This document shows positions 4,264-57,821 of a stretch of DNA of 64,000 bases, piece after piece; position 1 is the first letter of the stretch, and each line of letters begins with the position of its first letter. The position numbers and the translations under genes are program-made. The stretch covers positions 124,001 through 188,000 of the IMG/VR virus record IMGVR_UViG_3300036770_003657; one strand, given 5' to 3'. A model generated the notes under the pieces. It was not told where the DNA came from. It ran no database searches and saw only the letters and a list, made by a program, of their open reading frames with translations.

Positions 4264-4272
4264 GGAACGACG

Positions 4273-4518
4273 ATGACGTTGCGCTGGAATATTGATTTTA
4301 AGCCCGCAGACGCAGATTTCTGCTATGTCGACACCTACACAACTCATAATTCTAAAACATTCTACGAGAATATTTTTTACTGTAAGCCAGTAAAATATGA
4401 TGTCGATAGCACCCTATTAAATTATAACAATAATAACAAGCTATTCTACTCAACCTATTGGCCAAATAACGATATAACTCGTCATGCTGTAAGCCAAGGT
4501 GGTAGAATAAGCAGATGA
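4273..4518 (+). CDS. Small hypothetical protein (81 aa)
   Basis: SD AAGGA before the ATG; fills the gap between genes; its TGA overlaps the giant gene ATG (ATGA). Confidence 0.55.
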   Translation: MTLRWNIDFKPADADFCYVDTYTTHNSKTFYENIFYCKPVKYDVDSTLLNYNNNNKLFYSTYWPNNDITRHAVSQGGRISR

Positions 4519-7500
4519 GTGTATTAAAGAGATATTTCCAAGGCGTACAAGGAGTCCAAGACGGTTGGCGCTCCATAATGATTGGCGAAAAGGGTGCCCA
4601 AGGTACTCAAGGCCTACAAGGTGACAGCGCAGTTGGTGGATTTTTCTTATGGGAACAAACTACACCAGCTGTAGTTTGGGAAATTCCTCATAACTTAGGA
4701 GCACGAATTGTAGTCGTGCAGTTGGCCAATACCGATGGTGAAAGTATTCAAGAAGGTTTACCAGGTAGTCCATATATAGAATTTATTGATTCTAGTAATT
4801 TAAAGGTATATTTTAGCACAGCTACAGCAGGATATGCAGCAATTACCAGTGGTGGTGGCTTACAGGGTATCCAAGGTATGCAGGGTATCCAAGGTATACA
4901 GGGTGATTTGGGACCACAAGGTATTCAAGGTCGTCAAGGTACACAAGGTTTACAGGGTATTCAGGGTCTAGGTTTTGTATGGCGTGGCCTTTGGAATATA
5001 AACGAAACTTATAATTTTAATGACGTAGTATACTATAATGGTGGTAGCTGGGTAGCCAAACAACCAAATAGTGGTCAAGCAGCTCCATTCCAAGGTAGCG
5101 CATATTGGGATATAATGACAGCCCAAGGACCACAGGGTATACAAGGTGTACAAGGTAGATTTGGTCCACAAGGACCACAAGGACCACAAGGAACACAGGG
5201 TTTACAAGGTGATTTAGGTATACAAGGTATACAAGGTATACAGGGTATTCAAGGTCGAAGCATTATTTGGAAAGGTTATTGGACTGACACTGATGAATAT
5301 TTTATCGGTGATATGGTATACTATAATGGTGGTAGCTGGGTTTCAACTAGAGATGCTAGTTTATCGGATCCAAACATTAATAAAGAGCCATATGTAGGCA
5401 GTCAATTTTGGGATAAGAGTACTAGCCAAGGTATTCAAGGTGTACAAGGCGTACAAGGTGTACAAGGCGTCCAAGGCGTACAAGGTGTACAAGGCGTCCA
5501 AGGTATACAGGGTGTTGGATTCCAATGGCGTGGTACTTGGAGTGCTACTGAAGAATATGATATTAACCATACAGTATACTATAACGGCTTTAGTTATGTA
5601 AGTTTAATAAGATTCAACACTGGAAATAGACCAGATGACCCAGCTCATGATGATAAATGGGATATTGTAGCAGCACAGGGTGTACAGGGTGTCCAAGGCG
5701 TACAGGGTGTACAAGGTGTCCAAGGTGTCCAAGGTGTACAAGGTGTACAAGGCGTTCAAGGTGTACAAGGCGTTCAAGGTGTACAAGGCGTACAAGGCGT
5801 ACAGGGTGTACAGGGTGTCCAAGGCGTACAGGGTGTACAGGGTGTACAGGGTGTACAGGGTATCCAAGGTTTCAGTATTTTATGGCAAGGACAGTGGCAA
5901 AATAATGTAACCTATAATACAAACCACGTTGTTTATTATGATGGCAACAGCTGGATAGCATTAGAGGATGGAATAGAAGGTATACATCCAGGACCAGAAG
6001 ATGATAACGGTTATTGGGGAAGAATGACCGCTCAAGGTATCCAAGGTCTACAAGGTGTCCAAGGTGTACAAGGTGTACAAGGTGTACAAGGTGTACAGGG
6101 CGTTCAAGGCGTACAAGGTGTACAGGGTGTACAGGGCGTACAAGGTGTACAGGGCGTACAAGGTGTACAGGGCGTACAAGGCGTACAGGGTGTACAGGGT
6201 GTACAGGGCGTTCAGGGCGTTCAGGGTGTACAAGGTGTACAAGGTGTACAGGGCGTACAAGGTGTACAAGGCGTACAAGGTGTACAGGGTGTACAGGGCG
6301 TACAAGGTGTACAAGGTGTACAAGGCGTACAGGGTGTACAGGGTGTACAGGGCGTACAAGGTGTACAGGGTGTACAAGGTGTACAGGGTGTACAAGGTGT
6401 ACAAGGTGTACAGGGCGTACAGGGCGTACAGGGTGTACAGGGTGTCCAAGGTGTACAAGGTGTACAAGGTGTACAAGGTATTCAAGGTATTCAAGGTCTT
6501 GGATTTAACTGGAAAGGTGTTTGGGATCCTAATACTACATATTTTACTAATGATGCAGTATTTTATAATGGTAGTGCTTATAATAGTCAATATGATTATA
6601 ATATAGGTAAACGTCCAGATCTAACATGGGACCCTGAAGCATGGAGTATGATTGCAAGCCAAGGTATTCAAGGCTTGCAGGGTGTACAAGGTGTACAAGG
6701 TGTACAAGGCGTACAGGGTGTACAAGGCGTACAGGGTGTACAGGGTGTACAAGGCGTACAGGGTGTACAAGGTGTCCAAGGTGTACAGGGTGTCCAAGGC
6801 GTTCAAGGTGTACAGGGTGTTCAAGGCAATCAAGGTGTACAAGGCGTACAAGGCGTACAAGGTGTACAAGGCGTTCAAGGTGTACAGGGTGTACAGGGCG
6901 TACAGGGTGTACAAGGTGTACAAGGTGTACAAGGTGTACAGGGTGTACAGGGTGTCCAAGGCGTACAAGGTGTCCAAGGTGTCCAAGGTGTACAAGGTGT
7001 ACAAGGCGTTCAAGGTGTACAAGGCGTTCAAGGTGTACAAGGCGTTCAAGGTGTACAAGGTGTACAGGGTATTCAAGGCTTTGGTATCATTTGGCGTGGT
7101 TTATACGATTTTGATACAAGATATTATCAAAATGAAGTTGTATTCTATAATGGCGCAAGCTGGATTGTAAAATATACTGGTGTAGAAGGGGTAACTCCAG
7201 GTAGTGAAAATCCAACTACTGTACCAGGACCAGAGTATAATGATACATTTTGGGAATTATTAGCTAGTCAAGGTATTCAAGGATTACAAGGTGTACAGGG
7301 TGTACAAGGTGTACAAGGTGTACAGGGTGTACAGGGTGTACAAGGTGTACAGGGTGTACAGGGTGTACAAGGCGTACAAGGTGTCCAAGGTGTACAAGGT
7401 GTCCAAGGTGTCCAAGGTGTACAAGGTGTACAAGGCGTACAGGGTGTACAGGGTGTACAGGGTGTACAGGGCGTACAGGGTGTACAAGGTGTACAGGGTG

Positions 7501-10500
7501 TACAAGGCGTACAAGGTGTACAGGGTGTACAGGGTTTACAGGGCGTTCAAGGCGTTCAAGGTGTACAGGGCGTACAAGGCGTTCAAGGTGTACAAGGTGT
7601 ACAAGGTGTACAGGGTGTCCAAGGCGTACAGGGCGTTCAAGGTGTACAAGGCGTTCAAGGTGTACAAGGTGTACAAGGTGTACAGGGCGTACAAGGCGTA
7701 CAGGGTGTACAAGGTGTACAAGGTGTACAGGGTGTACAAGGTGTCCAAGGTGTACAAGGTGTACAGGGTGTCCAAGGTGTACAGGGTGTCCAAGGTGTCC
7801 AAGGTGTACAAGGTGTACAAGGTGTACAAGGTGTACAGGGTGTACAAGGCGTACAGGGTGTACAAGGCGTACAGGGTGTACAAGGTGTTCAAGGTGTACA
7901 GGGCGTTCAAGGTGTACAAGGTGTCCAAGGTGTCCAAGGCGTTCAAGGTGTCCAAGGTGTCCAAGGCGTACAGGGTGTACAGGGTGTACAAGGCGTACAG
8001 GGTGTACAAGGTGTACAAGGCGTACAAGGTGTACAAGGAGTACAGGGTGTTCAAGGCGTCCAAGGTATCCAAGGTATTCAAGGTCGCGGACCTGTATGGC
8101 GCGGTGATTGGAGTTCTACTGAACAATATCAAACAGATGATATGGTATACTATGATGGTAATACTTTTATTGCTATCACAGGCGACGCTACAACAAGATT
8201 CAGTGGTGTAGAAACTAGACCATTATTAAGCCCAGTAGGAGCAGGTTATCCAGGTGATGTGAACGATACTTACTGGAATAGAATGACCGCTCAGGGTGTC
8301 CAAGGTTTACAGGGCGTACAAGGTGTACAGGGTGTACAGGGTGTACAAGGAGTACAAGGAGTACAAGGTGTACAAGGCGTACAAGGCGTTCAAGGTGTAC
8401 AGGGCGTTCAAGGTGTACAGGGCGTTCAAGGCGTACAGGGTGTACAAGGAGTACAAGGTGTACAAGGCGTACAGGGTGTACAGGGTGTACAAGGCGTTCA
8501 AGGCAATCAAGGTGTGCAAGGTGTACAAGGAGTACAGGGTGTACAGGGTGTACAAGGTGTACAGGGCGTTCAAGGTGTACAAGGTAATCAAGGTGTCCAA
8601 GGTGTACAAGGCGTACAGGGCGTACAAGGTGTACAGGGTGTCCAAGGCGTACAAGGTGTACAAGGTGTGCAAGGCGTACAAGGCGTACAAGGCGTACAAG
8701 GCGTACAAGGTATACAGGGTGTACAAGGCGTACAGGGTGTACAGGGTGTACAAGGCGTACAAGGTGTTCAGGGTGTACAAGGTGTACAGGGCGTACAGGG
8801 CGTACAGGGTGTCCAAGGTGTACAAGGTGTACAGGGCGTTCAAGGTGTACAAGGTGTCCAAGGTGTACAGGGTGTACAGGGTGTACAGGGTGTACAAGGC
8901 GTACAGGGTGTACAGGGTGTCCAAGGTGTCCAAGGTGTACAAGGTGTACAAGGTGTACAGGGTGTACAAGGCGTACAGGGTGTACAAGGCGTACAGGGTG
9001 TACAAGGCGTACAGGGTGTACAAGGCGTTCAAGGCAATCAAGGTGTCCAAGGTGTCCAAGGTGTTCAAGGTGTACAAGGTGTACAGGGCGTTCAAGGCGT
9101 TCAAGGCAATCAAGGTGTACAGGGCGTTCAAGGCGTACAAGGTGTACAAGGCGTACAAGGCGTACAAGGCGTACAAGGTGTACAAGGTGTACAGGGTGTT
9201 CAAGGTGTACAAGGTGTACAGGGCGTTCAAGGTGTACAAGGTGTACAAGGCGTACAGGGTATTCAAGGATTTGGATTACGTTGGAAAGGCGAGTACGATC
9301 CTTCCACAATTTACCAACAAAATGATGTAGTTTATTATGACGGTGATAGCTTTATAGCAGTATATCCAATTGACCATTATAATGCACCGTTTGGACAATT
9401 CAGTGGTCAAGTACCAGAATTTACTCCAGGCGATGTAAACACTACATATTGGAATAGAATAACAGCTCAAGGTATTCAAGGTGTACAGGGTGTTCAAGGT
9501 GTACAGGGTGTTCAAGGTGTACAGGGTGTCCAAGGTGTACAGGGTGTACAAGGTCTACAAGGCATTCAGGGACTACAAGGTGTACAGGGTGTACAGGGTG
9601 TTCAAGGCGTCCAAGGTGTTCAAGGCGTCCAAGGTGTACAAGGCGTCCAAGGTGTTCAAGGCGTCCAAGGTGTACAAGGCGTCCAAGGTGTTCAAGGTGT
9701 ACAGGGTGTACAGGGTGTACAGGGTGTACAGGGTGTACAGGGTGTACAAGGCGTTCAAGGTGTTCAAGGTGTACAGGGTGTACAAGGCGTACAGGGTGTA
9801 CAAGGTGTACAGGGTGTACAAGGCGTACAGGGTGTACAAGGTGTACAGGGTGTACAGGGTGTACAGGGCGTACAAGGTGTACAGGGCGTACAAGGCGTAC
9901 AAGGTGTACAAGGTGTACAAGGTGTACAAGGCGTCCAAGGTGTACAAGGTGTCCAAGGTGTCCAAGGTGTACAGGGTGTACAAGGCGTACAAGGCGTACA
10001 GGGTGTACAAGGCGTACAAGGTGTACAGGGTGTACAGGGTGTACAAGGTGTACAAGGCGTTCAAGGTGTTCAAGGTGTTCAAGGTGTTCAAGGTGTACAA
10101 GGCGTACAAGGTGTACAAGGCGTACAGGGTGTACAAGGCGTACAAGGTGTACAGGGTGTACAAGGCGTACAAGGTGTACAGGGTGTACAGGGTGTACAAG
10201 GTGTTCAAGGCGTCCAAGGTGTACAAGGTGTACAAGGTGTACAAGGTGTACAAGGTGTCCAAGGCGTACAGGGCGTACAAGGTATACAGGGCTTTGGTAT
10301 TATCTGGCGTGGAATGTATGATTTCACAACAAGATATTATCAAAACGAAGTTGTTTTCTACAATGGTGCCAGCTGGATAGTTCGTTATACTGGTGTAGAA
10401 GGATTAACACCTGGTATAGATGACCCAACTACAGTACCAGGACCAGAATATAATGACACATATTGGGAATTACTAGCCAGCCAAGGTATCCAAGGATTAC

Positions 10501-13500
10501 AAGGTGTACAAGGTGTACAGGGTGTACAAGGTGTACAGGGCGTTCAAGGTGTACAGGGCGTACAGGGTGTACAGGGCGTACAGGGTGTCCAAGGTGTACA
10601 GGGTGTACAGGGTGTACAGGGTGTACAAGGTGTACAAGGCGTTCAAGGTGTACAAGGCGTTCAAGGTGTTCAAGGTATACAAGGTGTACAAGGTGTACAA
10701 GGTGTACAGGGTGTACAAGGTGTACAAGGTGTACAAGGCGTTCAAGGTGTCCAAGGTGTCCAAGGCGTTCAAGGTGTCCAAGGTGTACAGGGTGTACAAG
10801 GTGTACAGGGTGTACAAGGTGTCCAAGGTGTCCAAGGTGTACAGGGTGTACAGGGTCAGCAAGGTATTCAAGGTCTTGGATTTAATTGGCGTGGAGACTG
10901 GAAAGTAGATGAAGTATATGCCAAGAACGATGCTGTAAGGTATGATGGAACATCTTGGGTTTCTCTAACAAAAGATAATATAGGTAATAACCCAAGGCTT
11001 ACAGAAGGTGTTGAATGGGACGTAATTGCTGCACAGGGTGTACAGGGTGTTCAAGGTATTCAAGGTGTACAGGGCGTACAGGGCGTACAAGGTGTACAAG
11101 GCGTTCAAGGTGTACAGGGTGTTCAAGGCATTCAAGGATTCAGCTTTGTTTGGAGAGGTGAATACGATCACACAGCTGATTATCAACAGAATGATGTAGT
11201 TTATTATAATGGCAGTAGTTTTGTAGCTATTTGGCCAATTAATTTTTATGATGTCATTGGTAGCCAATTCAGTGGTGAAGTACCAGAAGTTATCGGAGTA
11301 TACGGTGAGCCAGGAACATTAAACAGTACATATTGGGCAAGAATGTCAGCTCAGGGCGTACAAGGTGTACAGGGTGTACAAGGCGTACAGGGTGTACAAG
11401 GTGTACAGGGTGTACAAGGCGTACAGGGTGTACAAGGTGTACAGGGTGTACAAGGTGTACAGGGCGTACAAGGTGTACAGGGCGTACAAGGTGTACAGGG
11501 TGTTCAAGGTGTACAAGGTGTACAAGGCGTTCAAGGCGTACAGGGTGTACAAGGAGTACAAGGTGTACAAGGTGTACAAGGCGTTCAAGGCAATCAAGGT
11601 GTACAGGGCGTTCAAGGCGTACAAGGTGTACAAGGCGTACAAGGCGTACAAGGTGTCCAAGGTGTACAAGGCGTTCAAGGCGTTCAAGGCGTACAAGGTG
11701 TACAAGGTGTACAAGGTGTACAGGGTGTACAAGGTGTACAGGGCGTTCAAGGCGTGCAAGGTGTACAAGGTGTACAGGGTGTTCAAGGTGTACAAGGTGT
11801 ACAAGGTGTACAAGGTGTACAAGGCGTACAGGGTGTACAGGGTATACAGGGTGTCCAAGGTGTCCAAGGCGTACAGGGTATACAAGGTTTTGGTATTATT
11901 TGGCGTGGATATTACGACTTCAATACTACATATTTCCAAAACGAAGTTGTTTTCTATGATGGAAATAGTTGGATAGTAAAATACACTGGAGTAGAAGGTG
12001 TTCCTACAGGTATCAGTAATCCAGCAGCAGTTCCTGGACCAACCGATATTGATACTTGGTGGGAAAGATTAAGTAGCCAAGGTATTCAAGGTTTACAAGG
12101 CGTTCAAGGTGTACAAGGTGTACAAGGCGTTCAAGGTGTACAAGGCGTTCAAGGTGTACAGGGTGTACAGGGTGTACAAGGTGTACAAGGCGTACAGGGT
12201 GTACAGGGCGTTCAAGGCGTTCAAGGTGTACAGGGCGTACAAGGCGTACAGGGTGTACAAGGTGTACAAGGCGTACAAGGCGTACAAGGTGTACAAGGCG
12301 TACAAGGTGTACAAGGCGTTCAAGGTGTACAAGGTGTACAAGGCGTTCAAGGCGTACAAGGCGTTCAAGGCGTACAAGGCGTACAAGGTGTACAGGGTGT
12401 ACAAGGCGTCCAAGGCGTTCAAGGCGTCCAAGGCGTACAAGGTGTACAAGGCGTACAGGGTGTACAAGGCGTACAGGGTGTACAAGGTGTCCAGGGTATC
12501 CAAGGTATACAAGGCGGACAGGGTATACAAGGCGTACAGGGCGTTCAAGGTGTACAAGGTGTACAAGGCGTACAGGGTGTACAAGGCGTACAGGGTGTAC
12601 AAGGCGTACAGGGTGTACAGGGCGTACAGGGTGTACAAGGCGTACAGGGTGTACAAGGCGTACAGGGTGTACAAGGCGTTCAAGGCGTACAGGGCGTTCA
12701 AGGTGTCCAAGGTGTACAGGGTGTACAGGGTGTACAAGGTGTCCAAGGTGTACAGGGTGTACAAGGTGTACAAGGTGTACAGGGTGTACAAGGTGTCCAA
12801 GGTGTACAAGGACAACAAGGTATTCAAGGCGGCGGTGTAACTTGGAAAGGCATTTGGAATTCAACAACTAATTACATTGAAAATGATGCAGTATTTTACA
12901 ATGGTAATTCTTGGATCAGCGTATTAGAACCAAATATAGATAATGTACCTAATTTAATGTCAATTTATTGGGACATGCTTGCTAGCCAAGGTATTCAAGG
13001 CTTGCAAGGCGTACAGGGTGTACAGGGTGTACAGGGCGTTCAAGGTGTACAGGGCGTTCAAGGTGTACAGGGCGTTCAAGGTGTACAGGGCGTTCAAGGC
13101 GTACAGGGTGTACAGGGCGTACAAGGTGTACAGGGTGTACAGGGTGTACAGGGTGTACAGGGTGTACAGGGTGTACAGGGTGTACAGGGCGTACAGGGCG
13201 TACAGGGCGTACAGGGCGTACAAGGTGTACAGGGTGTACAGGGTGTACAAGGTGTACAAGGCGTACAAGGCGTACAGGGCGTTCAAGGTGTACAGGGCGT
13301 ACAGGGCGTTCAAGGTGTACAAGGTGTACAGGGTATTCAAGGTGTACAGGGTATTCAAGGTGTAGGATTAATATGGAAAGGTCAGTGGAGTGATTCAGTA
13401 TCTTACATAGCCAACGACATTGTATTTTACGATGGCAGTGCTTATATTTCAGTTCAGTCAACTAACCTAAATAATAATCCAACAATTGAAGATAGATCAA

Positions 13501-16500
13501 CTGAATTTACAACGCCTGGAACTTATACTTGGATAGCACCTCCAGGAGTTACCAGTGTAAGTGCTGTAGCAGTTGGTGGTGGATCTAGACCACAAATAAT
13601 AGGTAGTGGATTCAGCGCCAAGAGTTATGGTGGTGGCGGTGGTGGTTTAGGTTATAAGAATAATATACCAGTCGTTCCTGGCCAAGCTTATACAGTAGTA
13701 GTTGGTAGTGGAGCAGCCACAGGCACATATGGTGATGGTGGTGATAGCTACTTTATCAGTTCAATTACAGTAAAAGGTGGCGGAGCTACTGGCAGCACAG
13801 GTGGTACTTATGTAGGTGATGGCGGTGGTAGCGGTGGTAACGGTGGTGCACCAAACGGAAATTCAAGTGGCGGCGCAGGTGATGGCAGTGCTACATCAGG
13901 TGGTGGTGGTGGTGCAGGTGGTTATAGTGGCAACGGTGGCGTTGGCGGAACTATGTTGGTTGACAGTGGTAATGGAGCCAATTTTGGTGCTAACGGCAGT
14001 GGTGGCGGTGGTGCTGGTGGTGGCGGAAGAAATAGTCACGGTGGCGGCGGTGGCGGTGGTGTTGGTATCTATGGCGAAGGAGACAGTGGACTTGCCAATA
14101 CTACTGCTTATGTACCAAACGTAGGTGGCTGGGGCGGCAATGGTGGTAGTGGTGGTACTACTGGTGGTACTGGAACTCAATCAGGTGTTAATGGTGGTGG
14201 CGGCCTATACGGTGGTGGTGCTGGTGGTGGCTGGGCTGGATATGGTGATGCTGCTGGTGGTGGTGCAGTAAGAATCATATGGGGTGCAGGACGTAGTTTC
14301 CCAAGCACAAACGTCAGTACTGCTAGTGATTTTGTTGAAACATCTACCAATGTTCAATACTGGCAGCGATTTACCAGTCAAGGTATACAGGGCGTACAAG
14401 GTCTTCAAGGTGTACAGGGCGTACAGGGCGTACAGGGCGTACAGGGCGTACAGGGTGTACAAGGCGTACAGGGTGTACAAGGCGTACAAGGTATCCAAGG
14501 TGTACAAGGTGTACAGGGTATCCAAGGTGTACAGGGTGTACAAGGTGTACAGGGTGTACAAGGTGTACAGGGTGTACAAGGTATACAGGGTGTACAAGGT
14601 ATACAGGGTGTACAGGGTGTACAGGGCGTACAGGGCGTACAGGGTGTACAGGGTGTACAAGGTATCCAAGGTGTAAGTATAACTTGGAAGGGAGTTTATG
14701 ATAATGCCGCTCAATATAGCCAAAATGACGTAGTATTTGAAAACGGCAGTAGTTGGATAGCAGTTTATCCATATACAAGTGGAACGTTTAGTGGCATAAG
14801 ACCAGGTGAAACAGTAGGTTGGATCACATATTGGAATATGATGACCAGCCAAGGTATTCAAGGTGTACAGGGTGTACAGGGTGTACAAGGTATTCAAGGT
14901 GTACAGGGTGTACAAGGTATTCAAGGTGTACAGGGTGTACAGGGTATACAAGGTGTACAAGGCGTACAAGGTATTCAAGGTGTCCAGGGTGTACAGGGTA
15001 TACAAGGTGTACAAGGCGTACAAGGTATTCAAGGTGTACAGGGTGTACAAGGTATTCAAGGTGTACAGGGTATCCAAGGTGTACAGGGTGTACAGGGTAT
15101 ACAAGGTGTACAGGGTGTACAGGGTATACAAGGTGTCCAGGGTGTACAGGGTGTACAGGGTATACAAGGTGTACAGGGTGTACAGGGTATTCAAGGTGTA
15201 CAGGGTGTACAGGGTATTCAAGGTGTACAAGGCGTACAAGGTATCCAAGGCGGTCAAGGTATTCAAGGTGTACAGGGTGTACAAGGTATCCAAGGCGTCC
15301 AAGGTGTACAAGGTATTCAAGGTGTACAGGGTGTACAAGGCATCCAAGGTGTACAAGGTGTACAAGGTATTCAAGGCGGTCAGGGTATACAAGGTGTACA
15401 AGGTATACAGGGTGTCCAAGGCATCCAAGGTGTACAAGGTATTCAAGGCTTCCAAGGCACCAAGGGTGAGGGCTTTACATTCTTGGGAGATTGGAGTCCT
15501 GTAACAGAATATATTAAGAATGACAGTGTATACTATAATGGTTCAAGCTATACAAGCACTTACGGTGATATAACATATGCTGGAGGTGGATTTGCTAATA
15601 TTAATCAACGTCCAGGTGAACTAGTAACAATATCAAATGTTAGCCTAACTGCTAGTGGTGTATTCAGTTGCGATAGTGTAAACCTATATAAAGCAGAAGT
15701 TATTAGAGTAAGTGGTACAGTTCCAGCAGGATTTACAATTGAGAATCCAGATAGTCCTGCTCAAGCTCCAACTTACTATACAGCTGGTCAACAAGTTGAT
15801 AATGATTATTATGTAATCACATATCCAAATAATCCAACTACAACCTTTACATTAGGACGTAGTCAATTCTCTGTAGATCCAATTAGTACAACTGGTACAG
15901 GCAGTTTAAGTGGGTTAACATTTAAGGCTGTTCCATGGTTAATTATTAGTGCTCAAGGTATTCAAGGATTACAAGGTGTACAAGGTATACAGGGTGTACA
16001 AGGTATACAGGGTGTACAAGGTATACAGGGCGTACAGGGTGTACAAGGTATACAAGGTGTACAAGGTGTACAAGGTATTCAAGGTGTACAAGGTATTCAA
16101 GGTGGTCAGGGCATACAAGGTGTACAAGGTATTCAAGGTGTACAAGGTATACAGGGTATTATTGGTACTCCAGGTGGTTATACAGCAAATTATAATTGGG
16201 ATAGTAGCACAGCAGTTGCCGATCCAGGTGTAGGTAATGTAACTATTGAGCGTAGTTGGACAGATCAAACTGCTGGTCAAGTTTATATCAATCTTGACAA
16301 GTATGACGCAGATGGACAAGATCGTGCAGCGTGGGTCAATGCTATCAAGTTCTTTGGTAGCGCAAGTAGCTACTATGGTGTTATTACAATTATGCCAGAA
16401 GGTGCTACAAATCAGCGCTGGACCGGTGTTATCACCGTAGTAAATGATCTCAGTACACATTTTAGACTACAGCTAACCTTTGTTGATAGTCAAGGATCAG

Positions 16501-19500
16501 CCCCAACAGTTGGACAAAAATTAGGCGTCAGCTTCCAGCCAGCTGGTCAACAGGGTATCCAAGGCGTACAAGGTATCCAAGGCGTACAAGGTATCCAAGG
16601 TGTACAAGGTGTACAAGGTATCCAAGGTGGTCAAGGCATCCAAGGTGTACAGGGTGTACAAGGTATACAAGGCGTACAAGGCGTACAAGGTATCCAAGGC
16701 GTACAAGGTATCCAAGGTGTACAGGGTGTACAGGGTATACAGGGTGTACAAGGCGTACAAGGCATACAAGGTGGTCAAGGCATACAAGGCGTACAGGGTG
16801 TACAGGGTATCCAAGGTGTACAAGGTGTACAGGGTATACAGGGCGTACAGGGTGTACAAGGTATCCAAGGTGGTCAAGGCATCCAAGGTGTACAGGGTGT
16901 ACAGGGTATACAGGGCGTACAGGGTGTACAAGGTATACAAGGTGGTCAAGGTATACAAGGTGTACAGGGTGTACAGGGTATACAGGGCGTACAGGGTGTA
17001 CAAGGTATCCAAGGTGTACAAGGTATACAGGGTATTCAAGGTTCAAGTATCACGTGGAGAGGCCAATACAGTCCAACAACTGTATACAATACAAACGACG
17101 TAGTATTTGAAAATGGTCAAAGCTGGGTTGGTGTAAGAGGTACAGGTAATAGTCAAACATTAACTAGTGTAGCACACAGCGGTAGTGGTGTGTTTACTTG
17201 TGCTGCTGCTACATTATTTGTTGGTGACCAAGTTACTGTAAGTGGAACAAATGGTGGCAACGTAGTATTACCAGGATACAGTGCTAGTGGTACAAATTAT
17301 TATATTATAGCTACAAATGGTACTACACAATTTACTTTAAGTACTACACTAAACGGATCTGCTGCTACAGCTACCACAGGTACTACAGTCAGTGGATCAA
17401 TGATATTTGTTGTACCAACAGGATTTGGAAATGTAAGACCTAACCTAACACAAACTAATCATTGGAACTTAATGACTAGCCAAGGTATCCAAGGTGTACA
17501 GGGTGTACAGGGTGTACAAGGTATCCAAGGTGTACAGGGTGTACAGGGTATACAAGGTGGTCAAGGCATACAGGGTGTACAAGGTGTACAGGGTGTACAA
17601 GGCATACAAGGTGGTCAAGGTATCCAAGGTGTACAAGGTATACAGGGCGTACAAGGTGTACAAGGTATCCAAGGTGTACAGGGTATTCAAGGTATTACTG
17701 GTTTAGGTATTACTTGGAAAGGAACTTGGACTAGTTCAACAGTTTACAATAGCAATGACGTAGTATTCTACAACGGCAATAGCTGGATTGGTGTACGTGG
17801 AACAGGTAACAGTGTAGCATTAAGTGGTGTAAGTATCGGGGCTAGTGGCGTAATATCCTGTACTGCTACAAGCTTGCCAGCAGGATTCCAAGTAGGTGAT
17901 CAAGTTCTAGTTGCAGGCATTAATAGTGGAACTGGTGCATTACCAAGTTACAGCGCCAGCGGCACTTACTATTATATTATAGCTACAAATGGTAGCACAC
18001 AATTTACCATAAGTACAACAGCTGGTGGTGCTGCTGCTAGTACAACTTCTGGTACTGTAAGTGGTGCAATGACCTTTACTGTAGCAACAGGTTTTGTCAA
18101 TGTCATTCCAAACTTAACTAATACAAACCACTGGAACCAAATGACCAGCCAAGGTATCCAAGGCATCCAAGGTGTACAAGGTGTACAGGGCATACAAGGT
18201 GTACAAGGTGTACAGGGTATACAAGGTGTACAAGGACGTCAAGGTGTACAGGGTGTACAAGGTATCCAAGGTGTACAAGGTGTACAAGGTATACAAGGTG
18301 GTCAAGGCATTCAAGGTGTACAGGGCGTACAAGGTATACAGGGTGTACAAGGACGTCAAGGTGTACAGGGTGTACAGGGCATACAGGGTGTACAAGGCGT
18401 ACAAGGTATACAGGGTGTACAAGGCGTACAAGGTATACAAGGTGGTCAAGGCATTCAAGGTGTACAGGGTGTACAAGGTATACAGGGTGTACAAGGTGTA
18501 CAAGGTATCCAAGGCGTACAGGGTCAGCAAGGTATTCAAGGTTCAGGCTTTAAGTGGCGTGGTGTTTGGGCTCCACAATTTGACTATGCTGTTAGTGATA
18601 TGGTATCACACTTGGGTAGCACATATGTTAGCTTAACTCAGTATCTTCCACAAACACTAGCAAATGTTCAAATTATATCTGCTGGTAAAATAACTTGTAA
18701 CACTCCAACTAATGCATTAAATCCAGGTGATGGTCTTTATGCTATAGGTGTTAAAACTGGAACAGGGTCTATAACTGGTTATAATAGTGCAGGAACAAAT
18801 TATTTCATAACAACAGTTAGCAATAATGCTGGCACTACTACATTAACTTTAAGTGCCAATTATAATCCGTATGTAACAGTTAGTACCACAGCAGGTACAA
18901 GCACTGGTATTACTTTCTACGCACCAACTTTTGTACCAACTAGCTTTACTAAAGATCAATATGATAATGGTCAATCAAGTGTAGGTGCTTGGCAGTTAGC
19001 AGGTTCACAGGGTATTCAGGGTGTACAAGGCGTACAAGGTGTACAAGGTATACAGGGCGTACAAGGTATACAGGGCGTACAAGGAGTACAGGGTATACAA
19101 GGTGTACAAGGTATACAGGGTATTCAAGGTGCAAGCCCAACTTGGAGAGGAACATATACAAGTGGTGTAGCATACAATACTAACGATATGGTATTCCATA
19201 ATGGTAATACATATATGGCCATTTATGGTACAGGTAATACTGTAGCATTAAGTGGTGTAAGTATTGGAGCTAATGGAACATTTACTTGTACAGCAGCAAG
19301 CCCAGCTCTTGTAGTTGGTAATGGTGTTAGAATCGTGGGCGCTGCCAGTGGTACTGGTAGTATTAGTGGTTACACAGAAGGTGCAACTTATTATATCACA
19401 GCTACAAACGGTAGTACAAGCTTTACTTTAAGTTCCACAATCGGCGGTGCAGCAGTAACAACTACTGCTGGTACAAGCACAGGATTAACATTCCAACATC

Positions 19501-22500
19501 CAGTAAGTTTTGCTAATCAAGTTCCAGCAACAGGTCAACCCCCAGTAGTTAATACAACTTACTGGAATCAGATGACCAGCCAAGGTATCCAGGGTGTACA
19601 GGGTGTACAGGGTGTACAAGGTATCCAAGGTGTACAAGGCGTACAAGGTATACAAGGTGGTCAAGGTATACAGGGTGTACAGGGTATACAGGGCGTACAA
19701 GGTATACAAGGTATTCAAGGCTTTAGTGTAACTTACAGAGGACAATACAATCCTGCTACAGTATACACACAGAACGATGTGGTATTTGAAAATGGACAAA
19801 GCTGGATTGCTATATGGCCAATTACAACAAGTACATTTAGTAATGTAAGACCAGGAGTAACAGCAGGTTGGGCTAACTATTGGGGCAACTTAACTAGCCA
19901 AGGTATACAGGGTGTACAAGGTGTACAAGGTGTACAAGGTATTCAAGGTGTACAAGGACGTCAAGGTGTACAAGGTATACAAGGTGTACAAGGCGTACAA
20001 GGTATTCAAGGTGTACAAGGTGTACAGGGTATACAGGGATTAAGTATCAATTGGAAAGGCCAGTTTAATCCTGCTACAGCATATAGTCAAAACGATGTAG
20101 TATTTGAAAACGGCGCAAGCTGGATAGCAAAATGGCCATATGCTAGTGGAACCTTTACAGGAATCAGACCAGGAGTAACAGTAGGCTGGGCTACATACTG
20201 GGATCAAATGACCAGCCAAGGTATCCAAGGTGTACAGGGTGTACAGGGTATCCAAGGTGTACAGGGTGTACAGGGTATCCAAGGTGTACAGGGTGTACAA
20301 GGTATACAGGGTGTACAAGGTGTACAAGGTATCCAAGGTGGTCAAGGTATACAAGGCGTACAAGGTATTCAAGGTGTACAAGGCGTACAAGGTATTCAAG
20401 GTGTACAGGGTGTACAAGGTATACAGGGCTTTAGTGTAACTTATAGAGGAATCTATAACAATGCTACAGTTTATACTCAAAATGATGTAGTATTTGAAAA
20501 TGGACAAAGTTGGATAGCAGTGTATCCAATTACAACAGGTACATTTAGTGGTCAACGTCCAAGTTTAGCAAATACAACATATTGGGGTCAATTAACAAGT
20601 CAAGGTATACAGGGTGTACAAGGTGTACAAGGTATACAAGGTGGTCAAGGTATCCAAGGTGTACAAGGTGTACAAGGTATACAGGGCGTACAAGGTGTAC
20701 AAGGTATCCAAGGTGTACAGGGTGTACAGGGTATACAGGGTGTACAAGGACGTCAAGGTGTACAGGGCATACAAGGTGTACAGGGTGTACAAGGTATACA
20801 AGGTGTACAAGGTGTACAAGGTATCCAAGGTGGTCAAGGTATCCAAGGCGTACAAGGTATTCAAGGTGTACAAGGTGTACAGGGTATCCAAGGATTTAGC
20901 GTAACTTACAGAGGAATATATAATAACGCCACAGTTTACACTCAAAATGATGTAGTATTTGAAAATGGACAAAGTTGGATAGCAGTATATCCAATAACTA
21001 GTGGAACATTTAGTGGTCAACGTCCAAGTTTAGCAAACACAACATATTGGGGTCAGTTAACAAGTCAGGGTATACAAGGTGTACAGGGTGTTCAAGGTAT
21101 TCAAGGTGGTCAAGGTATACAAGGTGTACAAGGTATACAAGGTATCCAAGGTGGTCAAGGTATTCAAGGTGTACAGGGTGTACAGGGTATACAGGGTGGA
21201 CAAGGTATTCAAGGTCGTCAAGGTATACAAGGTATCCAAGGTGGACAAGGTATACAGGGTATTCAAGGTGGTCAAGGTATCCAAGGTGTACAAGGTGTAC
21301 AAGGTATCCAAGGTGGACAAGGTATCCAAGGTGTACAAGGCGTACAAGGTATACAGGGTGGACAAGGTATACAAGGAGTACAGGGTGTACAAGGTATACA
21401 AGGTGGACAAGGTATTCAAGGTATCCAAGGTATCCAAGGATTTAGTGTTACATATCAAGGTGTATACAATAATGCTACAGTGTACACTCAAAATGATGTA
21501 GTATTTGAAAATGGACAAAGCTGGATTGCAATATATCCAGTAACAACAGGAACATTTAGTGGAATACGTCCAGGTGTAACAGTAGGTTGGGCTACATATT
21601 GGGGTAGATTAAGTCAACAAGGTATACAGGGTATACAGGGTGGACAAGGTATACAGGGTGTACAAGGTATCCAAGGTATCCAAGGTGGACAGGGCATACA
21701 GGGTGTACAAGGTATCCAAGGTATCCAAGGAGGCCAAGGTATTCAAGGTATCCAAGGTGGCCAAGGTATACAGGGTGTCCAAGGTGTTCAAGGTATACAG
21801 GGTGGACAAGGTATACAAGGTAGACAGGGTATACAGGGTCAACAAGGACTACAGGGTACACAGGGTCAACAAGGTATCCAAGGACAGCAAGGTACACAGG
21901 GTATACAGGGTCAACAAGGACTACAGGGTACACAAGGACAACAAGGTATCCAAGGTCAACAAGGTACACAGGGTATACAGGGTCAACAAGGATTACAGGG
22001 TACACAAGGACAACAAGGTATACAAGGTCAACAAGGTACACAGGGTATACAGGGTCAACAAGGTACACAAGGACTACAGGGTACACAAGGACAACAAGGT
22101 ATACAAGGACAGCAAGGTACACAGGGTATACAGGGACAACAAGGTACACAAGGTCAGCAAGGTATACAGGGTACACAAGGTCAGCAGGGGACACAAGGTG
22201 TTCAAGGATTCCAAGGATTCCAAGGTTATCAAGGTGTACAGGGTGAACAAGGTATACAGGGTGTACAAGGTATTCAAGGATTCCAAGGATTTATTGGTGA
22301 TCAAGGTACAACAGGTTCACAAGGTACAACAGGTGATACAGGCTTACAGGGATTACCAGGACCACAAGGTACAGATGGACAAACTGGAGCACAAGGTCCA
22401 CAAGGTCCACAAGGTTTAGATGGAACAATTGGAACATTAAGTTTAGCAACATTCAAGAGCGTAGTAGCAGGTGCCGCAAACTTCCAAGACTTCCAAACAG

Positions 22501-22517
22501 CAGTAGCAGCACTATAA
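4515..22517 (+). CDS. Giant collagen-like (Gly-X-Gln)n fibre protein with repeated Trp-rich bead modules (6000 aa)
   Basis: Uninterrupted 18-kb ORF with Gly at every third residue in the tracts ([12 protein letters not shown]). Tracts are separated by 25 W(R/K)G.[WY]..Y..ND.V.(Y/F).G.S[WY]...P...YW modules, one of which holds a Gly-rich domain. Confidence 0.9.
5430..22220 (+). repeat. Degenerate 9-bp coding tandem repeats (GG[T/C] [G/A]T[A/T/C] CA[A/G])n in about 25 tracts
   Basis: Directly visible, e.g. ggtgtacaa/ggtgtacag/ggcgtacaa; variation is mostly at third codon positions. Confidence 0.95.
21828..22043 (+). repeat. 72-bp higher-order repeat x3 ([24 protein letters not shown])
   Basis: Units at 21828-21899, 21900-21971 and 21972-22043 encode the same 24 aa. 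Confidence 0.85.
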
Positions 22518-25424: not shown

Positions 25425-26168
25425 ATGCTAGAATTAGGAATGTATTGCCTATGTTATGTAGGCCGAGAACCAAAAAATTATCAGTATAACCAACACAACT
25501 TAATGTGCGGGTCTGTTAATTATAATCAATTTGACGTTTTAGAAATGCAACGTCGAGGATTCTTAATGGATCATGTGGGTGAAAACATAAGTCATATGAA
25601 TAATGACTTTGGTAGTCTTACAGGATTGTATTGGGTTTGGAAAAATGCTGATCATGACTACAAAGGAACTAATACATATCGTATTTTTTGGAATGAAGAT
25701 TTTAATCTTAGACCAAATACTGTATATATTCCTGAAGCAAAAGATATAGTTACTGCTATAAAAGGATATGCTCCTAATGTAAACAGTGTATATGATCATT
25801 TTAGTCATTGTCATAATAGTTTAGGGTGGCAATTATTATATGGACTTGCTGGTGATCGACGTATACCTATTAGTATAGACATGATTGATGACCTTAGGAA
25901 TTACAAATATCTCATTCCTTTCCACATGTTTACAGCAGATAGAGTAACCTTTAATCGTATTTGTGAAATATTGTTTCAAATATTGTTTGAATTTCATGCT
26001 AATTATCAATACTTTTTACCAGAAATTCATAAACGTACTCAACAAGTAAGATTTTATGATTTTTTTGGTGAAAGAATATTACATATTATCCTAACAAATA
26101 ACTATTATTTTTTAGGAAATACAGATATAAGACATTTAAATATACTGGATATAGACCATCATGCTTGA
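25425..26168 (+). CDS. DUF4422-like putative glycosyltransferase
   Basis: GENISHMNNDFGSLTGLYWVWKN resembles the DUF4422 signature (DNISxxNxxxxELTxxYWxWKN); later GERIL motif. Confidence 0.65.
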   Translation: MLELGMYCLCYVGREPKNYQYNQHNLMCGSVNYNQFDVLEMQRRGFLMDHVGENISHMNNDFGSLTGLYWVWKNADHDYKGTNTYRIFWNEDFNLRPNTVYIPEAKDIVTAIKGYAPNVNSVYDHFSHCHNSLGWQLLYGLAGDRRIPISIDMIDDLRNYKYLIPFHMFTADRVTFNRICEILFQILFEFHANYQYFLPEIHKRTQQVRFYDFFGERILHIILTNNYYFLGNTDIRHLNILDIDHHA

Positions 26169-27414: not shown

Positions 27415-27420
27415 TAGATA

Positions 27421-28200
27421 ATGATTCCAGTAATAGGTACTTGCGTAGTTTTTACAACACATTGGGTAGAACGATTACTAGCCAGTGTAGATTTTCCTGT
27501 GGAGAATTTTCTTATCATTAATAATAATGGTAAAGGTGAGATCACAGAAAATTTAGATGCATTGGCAAAAATTAAAAGACATTTTATTAAAAATGTTCAT
27601 GTTGTTCATATGCCCTGTAATTTAGGAGTTCCTGCTAGTTGGAATCTTATTATTAAAAGTTATATAATGGCACCATATTGGCTAATTGTTAACGATGATG
27701 TAGCATTTGGGCCTGGTATACTAAAGGAAATTTATGATGCAGTCACAGAGGATCCAGAGTTAGGTATAATTCATGCCAATGAAGGAGACTTTAATGTAGG
27801 TAGTTGGGACTTATTTGTATTAAGAGATCATACAGTGGCTAAGTTTGGATTATTTGACGAAAATATGTATCCTGCTTATTGTGAGGATGATGACTATATC
27901 ATGCGTATGATGCATGCCGGTGTTAAGAAAAAATTAGGATTAACTAAAAATTATCTTCATGGAGCAGGAGATAAAACAGAATATCATTTCCATGGTGGTA
28001 ATACACGTAGACACAATCCAGAAATTATGAAAAAGTTGGATGAGGCAAGAGATATGAATATAGAATATCTCACAGCCAAATGGGATAAGCATTGGCGTAC
28101 TTGTTGGCCTACTTTTGAACCATGGCAAGGTCAGCCTCATGTATTAAATGAACAAAGATTTGATTTAGAATTTTTACGTAAGAAATATATAGGATTCTAA
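27421..28200 (+). CDS. GT-A fold (GT2-like) glycosyltransferase
   Basis: NLGVPASWN, LIVNDDV (DxD-like) and GLFDENMYPAYCEDDDY motifs. Confidence 0.75.
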   Translation: MIPVIGTCVVFTTHWVERLLASVDFPVENFLIINNNGKGEITENLDALAKIKRHFIKNVHVVHMPCNLGVPASWNLIIKSYIMAPYWLIVNDDVAFGPGILKEIYDAVTEDPELGIIHANEGDFNVGSWDLFVLRDHTVAKFGLFDENMYPAYCEDDDYIMRMMHAGVKKKLGLTKNYLHGAGDKTEYHFHGGNTRRHNPEIMKKLDEARDMNIEYLTAKWDKHWRTCWPTFEPWQGQPHVLNEQRFDLEFLRKKYIGF

Positions 28201-57813: not shown

Positions 57814-57821
57814 GATAGTTT

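What the first reader, a model, noticed from the sequence alone, without database searches (positions are those of the whole stretch)
5430..13360. Near-homopolymeric, proline-free and charge-free (GVQ)n collagen
Seen: tracts of up to about 100 consecutive triplets that are almost all GVQ, with no Pro, Lys, Asp or Glu in the tracts. Established: animal collagens rely on Pro/Hyp and bacterial Scl proteins on charged pairs for stability. Inference: stability must come from Gln side-chain ladders, Val packing, the beads, or post-translational modification; alternatively the fold is not a classic triple helix.
Basis: partly seen in the sequence, partly recalled or inferred. Interest (0 to 1): 0.65.

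Follow-up and report, generated by a model that had tools for sequence, protein, structure and literature searches.

The report
Giant proline-free (GVQ)n phage collagen fibre
A 400-kb freshwater jumbo phage encodes a 6000-residue "beads-on-a-string" fibre protein whose collagen-type Gly-X-Y tracts are almost pure Gly-Val-Gln; they lack the prolines and charge pairs thought to hold collagen helices together, and selection keeps them that way.

Summary
Window 5430-13367 lies inside one 18-kb ORF (4515-22517, +, 6000 aa). It holds 12 Gly-X-Y tracts of 10-109 triplets: 665 triplets, 603 of them GVQ, with no Pro, Lys, Asp or Glu.

The tracts are not simple DNA repeats. Third codon positions vary about 30%, while first and second positions vary 2% or less (about 9% at the Val first base). 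The longest exact repeat is 92 bp. Two full-length orthologues (6247 and 6481 aa) and about 20 more metagenomic phage contigs carry the same design.

The tracts pass Pfam's Collagen cut-off. They are separated by 53-73-aa beads with a CBM5/12-like fold, which is also seen in solved phage tail fibres. The gene sits in the tail/neck module of a T4-core jumbo myophage.

My best reading is a trimeric collagen-like virion fibre about 1 µm long that carries roughly 28 sugar-binding nodes.

Whether (GVQ)n really forms a triple helix, and what stabilises it, could not be tested here; the one trimer prediction gave no verdict. The architecture is a known kind. The Pro-free, charge-free, near-homopolymeric composition at this length is a new variant and conflicts with current stability rules.

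The parts
4515..22517 (+). Single ORF of 6000 aa (P0001): the giant collagen-like beads-on-a-string fibre protein. About 1140-1200 Gly-X-Y triplets make up roughly 60% of the protein.
   Evidence: A purine-rich Shine-Dalgarno-like AAGGTGG lies about 15 nt upstream of the ATG.
4620..4856 (+). N-terminal non-collagen domain (aa 36-114). It is conserved in the orthologues (44-70% identity). Candidate virion-attachment end (inference).
   Evidence: No Pfam or PDB relative.
5430..5519 (+). GVQ tract, 10 triplets
5679..5876 (+). GVQ tract, 22 triplets
6036..6503 (+). GVQ tract, 52 triplets
6663..7085 (+). GVQ tract, 47 triplets
7272..8090 (+). GVQ tract, 91 triplets
8295..9275 (+). Longest GVQ tract: 109 triplets (101 GVQ, 4 GNQ, 2 GIQ, 1 GLQ, 1 GFG)
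9471..10298 (+). GVQ tract, 92 triplets
10485..10880 (+). GVQ tract, 44 triplets
11037..11144 (+). Short GVQ tract, 12 triplets. Its length is conserved in the closer orthologue.
11355..11894 (+). GVQ tract, 60 triplets
12081..12836 (+). GVQ tract, 84 triplets
12990..13367 (+). GVQ tract, 42 triplets (last tract of the finding)
5520..12989 (+). Eleven inter-tract beads of 53-73 aa with a CBM5/12-like fold. They lie at 5520-5678, 5877-6035, 6504-6662, 7086-7271, 8091-8294, 9276-9470, 10299-10484, 10881-11036, 11145-11354, 11895-12080 and 12837-12989.
   Evidence: Alignment A1. Pfam CBM_5_12 is marginal, 15-27.7 bits against a 26.2 cut-off. Profile hit to 7b5h Cis13, E=5e-5. AF2 pLDDT 90.7. Fold matches to the A-1(L) tail fibre and to chitin-binding domains and to viral collagen/tail-fibre proteins.
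13509..14012 (+). Glycine-rich domain (Pfam Gly_rich_2) inside a 341-aa spacer. It is absent at this place in the two full-length orthologues.
14382..22439 (+). C-terminal half: 13 more tracts of mixed [15 protein letters not shown]. The beads here are either about 60 aa or about 150 aa, the larger ones carrying a roughly 90-aa beta-rich insert. Pro and charged triplets appear only in the last ~20 triplets.
22413..22514 (+). C-terminal 34 aa, non-collagen and conserved in the orthologues. Candidate trimerisation/nucleation helix (inference).
22532..25372 (+). 946-aa structural protein directly downstream. It is syntenic in 5 of 5 relatives.
25425..26168 (+). DUF4422 protein (I take it for a GT-A-type glycosyltransferase, from my own recollection of the family; not shown by any search here), 77-84% identical in 5 of 5 relatives and always next in line. 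Candidate fibre-modifying enzyme (by association only).
27421..28200 (+). Family-2 glycosyltransferase-like protein (weak Pfam match)

Best explanation
The ORF encodes a homotrimeric, collagen-like virion fibre of a freshwater T4-core jumbo myophage. Three chains are taken to wind their (Gly-Val/Ile-Gln)n tracts into collagen triple helices. Each tract would be a rod of up to about 94 nm (109 triplets at about 0.286 nm per residue). About 28 small CBM5/12-like beads interrupt the rods, three per node. The whole would be a flexible filament of roughly 1 µm with many weak sugar-binding sites that widens the phage's capture radius for its host.

In this model, tract stability does not come from proline or salt bridges. 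It would come from:
- the acceptable intrinsic triple-helix propensities of beta-branched Val/Ile at X and Gln at Y;
- the great cooperative length of each tract;
- clamping and registering of every tract between folded trimeric beads, plus a conserved C-terminal helix;
- a cool habitat that demands only a modest melting temperature.

Shown: the sequence anatomy, the selection on G, V and Q, the recurrence in relatives, the bead fold and the structural-module context.

Inferred: trimer state, triple-helical conformation, sugar binding, position on the virion and the sources of stability.
For: Strict Gly every third residue: 0 of 665 triplets deviate at the two Gly-defining bases, while the synonymous third base varies 33%.

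Purifying selection acts on V and Q. There are 590 synonymous against 72 non-synonymous codon differences, and there is no higher-order DNA repeat.

Beads have diverged to 44-86% identity between orthologues, while the tracts stay above 90% G-V/I-Q. Short tracts keep exactly the same length: 3, 12, 14, 9, 21, 11 and 22 triplets.

GVQ tracts score 39.7 bits on Pfam Collagen, against a cut-off of 27.2.

Every tract ends in GIQ-G(F/L/R/G/V)(G/S), and most start with GIQ-GLQ after a bead ending in Q. This points to defined junctions rather than loose linkers.

The bead model (pLDDT 90.7) superposes on the cyanophage A-1(L) tail fibre (TM 0.80-0.82), Anabaena CIS Cis13 and chitin-binding domains (rmsd 1.1 Å). 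It also matches many viral proteins named collagen repeat or tail fibre.

The gene lies among tail and neck genes: gp15-like stabiliser, sheath, tube, adaptor.

An Atlas cluster of 119 bacterial proteins combines Collagen and CBM_5_12.

The runs that hold the sequence are freshwater, lake, aquatic and subsurface metagenomes from 12 studies.

Literature: recombinant bacterial collagens gain stability with length up to about 150 residues (PMC7824840). Gln is favoured at Y in viral and bacterial collagens (PMC3368898). An MD study lists GVQ-GAQ among the stable stretches of collagen I (PMC9969283).

From my memory of Persikov et al. 2000 (not checked here): host-guest Tm is about 39 °C for Val at X and about 41 °C for Gln at Y, against 47 °C for Pro-Hyp.
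Against: There is no direct structural evidence. The single trimer prediction (ESMFold2, three copies of aa 2090-2310) scored 0.02 and counts as no verdict.

Both factors that reviews call the main stabilisers are absent from the tracts. Additivity from host-guest data predicts only a low-to-medium stability triplet.

Sugar binding by the beads is inferred from fold alone; most beads fall below Pfam's CBM_5_12 cut-off.

No virion proteomics or micrograph exists for this uncultured phage.

Tract lengths are unverified by reads.
Confidence: 0.6

Rival explanations
1. The tracts do form a triple helix, but only after post-translational modification. A phage enzyme (the conserved DUF4422 or GT2 glycosyltransferase-like genes next door, or one of the radical-SAM enzymes further on) would modify Gln, Val or bead residues, and the modification would supply the missing stability or protease resistance.
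For: DUF4422 is 77-84% identical and syntenic in 5 of 5 relatives, better conserved than the structural gene between them. A GT2-like gene lies at 27421-28200. At least six twitch radical-SAM genes lie at 53-61 kb. Glycosylation is a known collagen stabiliser, discussed as such in PMC3368898 and PMC11923368.
Against: The tracts have no Thr, Ser, Lys, Hyp or Asn sequon, which are the usual acceptors. Gene neighbourhood alone is weak evidence. No prolyl hydroxylase or transglutaminase was found. The radical-SAM cluster is 30 kb away in a compositionally different (25-30% GC) region.
Confidence: 0.15
2. The tracts are not triple-helical in the virion. They would be flexible, uncharged, protease-poor tethers (an entropic spring) that merely space the sugar-binding beads. 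The beads or the termini alone would hold the chains together, or the protein would be monomeric.
For: The known stabilisers are missing. Long tracts change length freely between orthologues, for example 51 against 24 and 46 against 78 triplets, as expected of spacers. The trimer prediction gave nothing (formally no evidence either way).
Against: A disordered spacer would not need invariant Gly at every third position, nor near-invariant Gln at Y, over 665 triplets while synonymous sites drift. Tract ends are conserved motifs. Short tracts keep exact lengths. The sequence meets the collagen HMM.
Confidence: 0.12
3. The tracts adopt another ordered fold with a three-residue period, such as a polyglycine-II/PPII bundle or a Gln-zipper cross-beta assembly, or they bundle laterally into thicker fibrils.
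For: The Val/Gln surface is uncharged and amphiphilic, so it could self-associate. Polyglycine-II sandwiches exist in phage adhesins (my recollection of Salmonella phage S16 gp38; not checked here).
Against: PGII bundles need small residues at two of three positions, whereas here X and Y are Val and Gln. A period of three does not fit beta-sheet alternation. The collagen HMM is met.
Confidence: 0.05
4. Assembly artefact or decaying pseudogene: a short-read assembler strung repeats together, and no such protein is made.
For: Many related contigs end inside the gene. Logan contigs break in the tracts. Lengths are unverified.
Against: An 18-kb frame without a stop is present in three independent contigs with matching N- and C-termini and bead order. 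The synonymous-only variation speaks against decay. The 77-mers are 99.4% unique. Flanks match run X1 with zero differences.
Confidence: 0.03

Closest known systems
Phage and prophage collagen-like tail-fibre proteins (e.g. E. coli O157 EPclA-type proteins, PMC3368898; 'Collagen triple helix repeat' proteins of uncultured Caudovirales in BFVD)
   Same: Gly-X-Y tracts are flanked by small globular trimerising domains, Gln is favoured at Y, the genes lie in tail modules, and the same bead fold occurs in many of them.
   Different: Those collagens are rich in Pro at X (48%) and in charged residues (GPK, GER, GET) and are a few hundred residues long. Here Pro and charge are 0% over 665 triplets, one triplet dominates (91%), and the protein has 6000 residues.
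Bacterial collagens of the Scl1/Scl2 type and the recombinant bacterial collagens studied by Brodsky, Ramshaw and colleagues
   Same: They form a triple helix without hydroxyproline, with stability of about 36-39 °C that plateaus with length (PMC7824840).
   Different: Their stability is attributed to Pro at X and to charge networks, and both are absent here.
Bacillus BclA-type (GPT)n and Gram-positive Thr/Gln-rich collagens
   Same: Low-complexity, near-homopolymeric, nearly uncharged Gly-X-Y tracts forming surface filaments. They have a polar uncharged Y residue.
   Different: They carry Pro at X and glycosylated Thr at Y. Here X is Val/Ile and Y is Gln, with no obvious glycan acceptor.
Collagen + CBM_5_12 proteins of Bacillota (ESM Atlas cluster of 119 members) and Megavirus/Tupanvirus collagen-like proteins with the same bead fold
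   Same: The same two-module architecture: collagen tracts plus a ChiC/CBM5/12-like domain.
   Different: They are under about 1000 aa with few beads. I did not examine their triplet composition.
Bead-chain neck fibres and tail fibres of cyanophage A-1(L) (PMC10966104), and 'hairy' whiskers of jumbo phages Atu_ph07 and CBB (PMC6102473)
   Same: Long thin accessory fibres on large myophages, with a bead-chain appearance. The A-1(L) short-tail-fibre joint domain shares the bead fold. Atu_ph07 shares the terminase and the upstream 701-aa gene family.
   Different: None of these is reported as collagen-like. tblastn of two beads against 50,697 phage records found nothing.

Membership tests
Collagen triple helix repeat (Pfam PF01391) | Uninterrupted Gly-X-Y period over many triplets | tested here: met
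   12 tracts of 10-109 triplets; 0 of 665 triplets lack Gly
Collagen triple helix repeat (Pfam PF01391) | Profile score over the curated cut-off | tested here: met
   Pure GVQ stretches score 39.7 bits against 27.2. The C-terminal region scores 144 bits.
Collagen triple helix repeat (Pfam PF01391) | Three chains in a supercoiled PPII triple helix | tested here: inconclusive
   Prediction of three copies of aa 2090-2310 gave 0.02, which counts as no verdict. This needs CD, EM or diffraction.
Collagen triple helix repeat (Pfam PF01391) | Usual stabilisers present: imino acids at X/Y and/or Lys-Gly-Glu/Asp charge pairs | tested here: not met
   Zero Pro, Lys, Asp or Glu in the tracts. These are typical features rather than strictly defining ones.
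Collagen triple helix repeat (Pfam PF01391) | Adjacent non-collagen trimerisation/registration domain | tested here: inconclusive
   Candidates exist: beads on both sides of each tract and a conserved 34-aa C-terminus. Their oligomeric state was not established.
Carbohydrate-binding module family 5/12 (PF02839) | Profile score over the cut-off | tested here: inconclusive
   15-27.7 bits against a 26.2 cut-off; only the segment aa 2100-2300 passes. The bead profile hits the ChiA1 chitin-binding domain at E=0.0047.
Carbohydrate-binding module family 5/12 (PF02839) | Small three-stranded beta fold with exposed aromatic residues | tested here: met
   AF2 pLDDT 90.7. TM 0.73 and rmsd 1.1 Å to Vibrio chitin deacetylase CBMs, and matches to 1ed7 and 2d49. 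Trp/Tyr columns are conserved.
Carbohydrate-binding module family 5/12 (PF02839) | Binds chitin, cellulose or another glycan | not testable with these tools
   Needs glycan array or pull-down
Phage tail/neck fibre | Encoded in the tail/neck structural module | tested here: met
   Neighbours: tail-protein-like 701 aa, structural 946 aa, gp15-like stabiliser, adaptor, sheath, tube
Phage tail/neck fibre | Domains shared with solved fibres | tested here: met
   The bead matches 8kec (A-1(L) tail fibre), 7b5h Cis13, 9rkv (7-7-1 tail fibres) and 8fqc (Milano RBP complex)
Phage tail/neck fibre | Present in virions and attached to baseplate, neck or capsid | not testable with these tools
   Uncultured phage; no proteome or micrograph
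Streptococcal Scl-type bacterial collagen | N-terminal V domain, charge-rich CL region, cell-wall anchor | tested here: not met
   No such domains, no charges in the tracts, and the context is a phage

The most novel reading that the evidence does not exclude
(Gly-aliphatic-Gln)n, with its (Gly-aliphatic-Ser)n cousins in sister phages, is a third, self-sufficient way to stabilise a collagen triple helix. It would be independent of imino acids, hydroxylation, glycosylation and salt bridges, for example through inter-chain Gln amide hydrogen-bond ladders and conformationally restricted beta-branched X residues. Freshwater jumbo phages would use it to build micrometre-long, uncharged, protease-poor fibres. 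If so, the proposed universal salt-bridge 'folding code' of collagens has a large natural exception, and a minimal three-letter collagen is available for design.
Probability: 0.35. Interest if true: 0.78.

Novelty: new variant of a known kind. Interest (0 to 1): 0.6.

Why it matters
Current accounts name two main stabilisers of collagen helices: imino acids and opposite-charge pairs. A recent survey argues that Lys-Gly-Glu/Asp salt bridges are a folding code shared by collagens of all domains of life and viruses (PMC11923368).

Here natural selection has kept more than 600 consecutive-type triplets free of both, in tracts of up to 109 triplets. It has done so across a family of phages from at least a dozen freshwater studies. 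Either these tracts fold by a mechanism that has not been characterised, or a strictly Gly-X-Y sequence is used for something other than a triple helix. Both outcomes would be informative.

The sequence is also the simplest natural collagen candidate I know of (three residues, no modification sites). That makes the question directly testable with peptides and recombinant fragments, and it is attractive for designed, uncharged collagen materials.

For phage biology it adds a roughly 1-µm multivalent fibre to the repertoire of jumbo-phage appendages.

Tried and rejected
1. Trimer prediction of aa 2090-2310 in three copies. Score 0.02, controls not run, no verdict. It is not evidence either way.
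The permitted part, 4001-7200, showed only short Logan contigs that do not bridge tracts, so tract lengths stay unverified.
3. megablast of the downstream 7.5 kb and tblastn of two beads against 50,697 phage records found no match. No cultured relative carries this gene.
4. The word-index protein search with the N-terminal 520 aa found only two convincing long relatives, both unnamed JGI proteins. The rest are generic collagen matches, including animal collagens, and were not followed.
5. PDB sequence searches with the N-terminal domain and the Gly-rich domain found nothing.
6. The AF2 model of the ~150-aa large bead had pLDDT 70, and its Foldseek hits were TM about 0.35. The insert fold is unassigned.
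7. No prolyl-4-hydroxylase-type (PF13640) or transglutaminase-core (PF01841) gene was found in the 400-kb genome, so I dropped hydroxylation and Gln-Lys cross-linking by a phage enzyme as favoured explanations.
8. Recent DNA slippage as the cause of homogeneity is rejected. Synonymous sites are scrambled, there is no higher-order repeat, and the longest exact repeat is 92 bp.
9. The idea that tract composition reflects genome-wide bias is rejected. The same phage has a conventional GPQ/GEQ/GEP collagen, and the rest of its proteome has 6.9% Gly, 6.3% Val and 3.6% Gln.
10. A literature search for GVQ with collagen found no paper on such repeats.

Full report
**What is there**

The finding lies inside one open reading frame, 4515..22517 on the + strand. 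It is 6000 codons long with no stop. A purine-rich ribosome-binding-like motif precedes the ATG.

The window is bases 124001-188000 of a 399,796-bp IMG/VR virus record that CheckV rates complete. The neighbours identify a T4-core jumbo myophage:
- a 1121-aa tail sheath, tail tube, gp15-like sheath stabiliser and head-tail adaptor;
- a large terminase, 54% identical to that of Pseudomonas phage PA5oct and about 50-53% to Phosso and Atu_ph07;
- a gp32-like SSB and a UvsX recombinase.

**Check of the observation**

The protein has 33 runs of at least 4 Gly-X-Y triplets, about 1140-1200 collagen-type triplets in all, or roughly 60% of its length. The stretch 5430-13367 holds 12 tracts of 10-109 triplets.

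Of their 665 triplets, 603 are GVQ, 31 GIQ and 10 GLQ. The residues are G677, Q655, V605, I31, L12, F6, N6, S2 and R1. There is no Pro, Lys, Asp or Glu. The longest tract (8295-9275) has 109 triplets, 101 of them GVQ.

**It is a protein-level feature, not a DNA repeat**

- Each long tract uses 10-16 different 9-mers.
- Over the 665 units, the bases that define Gly and Gln and the second base of Val vary by 2% or less.
- The first base of the X codon varies 8.7% (Val to Ile or Leu).
- The three third-codon positions vary 28-34%.
- Against the consensus unit, 590 codon differences are synonymous and 72 are not. Random single-base changes would give about 26% synonymous.
- There is no higher-order repeat. 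The longest exact repeat in the whole gene is 92 bp, and 99.4% of 77-mers in the region are unique.

This is the signature of old tracts held by purifying selection on Gly, Val/Ile and Gln in this frame. It also means the region can in principle be assembled from short reads.

I could not verify tract lengths with reads. On 4001-7200 only short Logan contigs were laid. They match the unique flanks of run X1 without a difference but do not bridge tracts.

**Relatives**

A bead profile found 76 loci in IMG/VR. About 30 open frames on roughly 20 contigs carry tracts with under 1.5% Pro and under 3% charged residues. In these, X is Val/Ile/Leu/Thr. Y is almost always Gln, or Ser in one lineage (L010, L066). 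Other lineages use GPT/GAT or GDK/GEK.

Two full-length orthologues of 6247 and 6481 aa could be read from overlapping loci of two contigs. They share the N-terminus, the C-terminus and much of the bead order with the window's protein.

Comparing them with the window's protein:
- Beads are 44-86% identical, yet the tracts remain above 90% G-(V/I)-Q.
- Short tracts have exactly the same length (3, 12, 14, 9, 21, 11 and 22 triplets).
- Long tracts differ, for example 51 against 24, 46 against 78 and 108 against 82.

The downstream 946-aa structural protein and a DUF4422 protein (which I take for a glycosyltransferase, from my own recollection of the family) follow the giant gene in 5 of 5 relatives tested. 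The DUF4422 protein is 77-84% identical.

The costly word search found only two further long relatives, unnamed JGI proteins. Nothing was found in 50,697 deposited phage genomes.

Runs that share words with the region come from freshwater, lake, aquatic, lagoon and subsurface metagenomes of 12 studies. Summed contig depth over the tract-coding words is about a hundred times that of the unique flanks. This suggests that such coding sequence is common there, although depth summed over contigs is a poor measure.

**The beads**

The 53-73-aa spacers align with invariant Gly, Tyr, Val, Gly, Pro, Trp and a terminal Gln.

- Pfam CBM_5_12 matches are marginal: 15-27.7 bits against a cut-off of 26.2.
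- The bead profile hits Anabaena contractile-injection-system protein All3316 (Cis13) at E=5e-5. Weaker hits are the chitin-binding domain of chitinase A1 and a cyanophage short tail fibre.
- An AlphaFold2 model has pLDDT 90.7.
- The model superposes on the A-1(L) tail fibre (TM 0.80-0.82), Cis13, and CBM5/12 modules of chitin deacetylases and chitinases (rmsd 1.1 Å). It also superposes on the fibres of Agrobacterium phages 7-7-1 and Milano.
- In BFVD the same fold occurs in dozens of viral proteins named collagen triple helix repeat, tail fibre or ChiC_BD. These include Megavirus and Tupanvirus collagen-like proteins.
- An Atlas cluster of 119 Bacillota proteins combines Collagen and CBM_5_12.

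The architecture, collagen tracts alternating with CBM5/12-like knobs, is therefore a known kind.

In the C-terminal half the beads are either about 60 aa or about 150 aa, the larger ones with a beta-rich insert whose fold I could not assign. A Gly_rich_2 domain (13509-14012) sits in a 341-aa spacer that the orthologues lack.

**How it most likely works**

The pure GVQ stretches pass Pfam's Collagen threshold: 39.7 bits against 27.2. Invariant Gly at every third residue is the one absolute requirement of the triple helix.

Tract ends are conserved. Each tract ends with GIQ followed by G-(F/L/R/G/V)-(G/S). Most begin GIQ-GLQ right after a bead that ends in Q. That points to defined rod-knob junctions.

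I therefore read the protein as a homotrimeric fibre. Rods of up to about 94 nm (327 residues at 0.286 nm, the textbook rise) are joined by about 28 nodes of three beads. There is about 570 nm of helix in the finding's range and about 1 µm in all.

Long thin 'whiskers' are known on related jumbo phages such as Atu_ph07 (PMC6102473). Bead-chain neck fibres are known on A-1(L) (PMC10966104).

A plausible role is reversible, multivalent binding to surface glycans, which would enlarge the capture radius. This role is inferred from fold and context only.

**Stability**

Reviews name imino acids and opposite-charge pairs as the two major stabilisers (PMC13138384). A 2025 survey finds KGE/KGD salt-bridge triplets over-represented in collagens of all domains of life and viruses (PMC11923368).

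But Gln and Thr at Y are already known to be favoured in viral and bacterial collagens, and Gram-positive collagens are poor in charge (PMC3368898, Table 4).

Supporting points on propensity and length:
- From memory of Persikov et al. 2000, Val at X and Gln at Y are mid-to-good guests (about 39 and 41 °C, against 47 °C for Pro-Hyp).
- An MD study lists GVQ-GAQ among the stable stretches of collagen I.
- Recombinant bacterial collagens gain stability with length up to about 150 residues (PMC7824840).

My favoured account combines ordinary propensities, long cooperative tracts, clamping of each tract between folded trimeric knobs, a conserved C-terminal 34-aa segment as nucleus, and a cool habitat. 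None of this was tested.

The single trimer prediction allowed gave no verdict.

On modification:
- I found no prolyl hydroxylase or transglutaminase in the genome.
- The tracts have none of the usual glycan acceptors.
- The conserved DUF4422 and GT2-like neighbours keep a modification-dependent model alive.

The same phage also encodes a conventional 362-aa collagen with GPQ/GEQ/GEP triplets. The Pro-free, charge-free composition is therefore specific to this fibre and not a genome habit.

**Rivals**

- A flexible, non-helical tether fits the length variation of long tracts. It does not fit the strict conservation of Gly and Gln, or the conserved junctions and short-tract lengths.
- Other three-periodic folds are unlikely with Val and Gln at both non-Gly positions.
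- An assembly artefact is unlikely, given three independent intact 18-19-kb frames and the synonymous-only variation.

**Verdict**

The object is a giant collagen-like beads-on-a-string fibre gene of an uncultured freshwater jumbo phage. The kind is known. The extreme Pro-free, charge-free, nearly homopolymeric (GVQ)n composition, its scale and its recurrence under selection make it a new variant. It poses a clean, testable problem for collagen biophysics.

Noticed in passing
L078:3-19172 (= G000:C1:104003-123172), just upstream of the window: A second giant ORF of more than 6389 aa (open at the 5' end of the fetched piece) lies close upstream of the collagen gene. It is not collagen: Ala/Thr/Val/Leu/Asp-rich, with a recurring Cys-x-Arg-Asp-(Val/Ile)-Gly-Leu ... 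Tyr-Asp-Leu motif suggesting many tandem helical domains. A 6904-aa frame also exists in relative G002. Two 6000-aa genes close together in a structural module.
   Followed up: partly
window 53093-61254 (+): A run of at least six radical-SAM genes lies in a 25-30% GC block. Four score far over the cut-off of NCBIfam NF033640 'twitch domain-containing radical SAM protein', and some have SPASM-like parts. Substrate unknown; a phage-borne peptide- or sugar-modifying cluster is possible.
   Followed up: partly
L079:453-1541 (-) (= G000:C1 about 51752-52840): The same phage has a conventional 362-aa collagen-like protein with [12 protein letters not shown] triplets and a beta-rich C-terminal domain. 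This shows that the Pro- and charge-free make-up of the giant is gene-specific.
   Followed up: partly
L080:345-1082 (+) (= G000:C1 about 331544-332281): A third, small (245-aa) collagen-like protein with about 25 mixed G-x-Q triplets, followed by a Cys-rich C-terminal domain.
   Followed up: no
window 13362-14381 (aa 2949-3289): A 341-aa spacer with a Pfam Gly_rich_2 domain is inserted at one node. It has no counterpart at that node in the two full-length orthologues (best identity 0.17-0.21), so it is a lineage-specific domain gain in the middle of the fibre.
   Followed up: partly
window 5430-13367, codon usage: Within the tracts, Gly is GGT/GGC in 99% of codons and GGA in 1%, against 27% GGA elsewhere in the genome. 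Val is GTA in 81% (48% elsewhere), and GTG is almost absent. The phage carries tRNA-Gly(GCC), tRNA-Val(UAC) and tRNA-Gln(UUG) among its 27 tRNA genes, so synonymous choice is not free either.
   Followed up: partly
L010, L066 (IMG/VR contigs 3300011339_000736 and 3300006802_014262): Sister fibres with the same bead use (Gly-Leu/Ile/Thr/Ala-Ser)n instead of (Gly-Val-Gln)n, again with almost no Pro or charge. L041 and L043 have uninterrupted runs of 104-148 triplets of G-(T/V/L/I)-Q. Imino- and charge-free collagen tracts are therefore a class, not a single oddity.
   Followed up: partly
window 25425-28200: A DUF4422 protein, a TPR protein and a GT2-like protein sit between the fibre module and the neck genes. 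DUF4422 is more conserved among relatives (77-84%) than the structural protein beside it (43-71%).
   Followed up: partly
window 4857-7103, Logan contigs of runs X1, X2, X3, X9: Summed contig depth over tract-coding words is in the thousands, against about 16 on the unique flanks, in four freshwater/subsurface metagenomes. Many different G-x-Q-coding contigs are present, so this kind of gene may be abundant in such waters.
   Followed up: no
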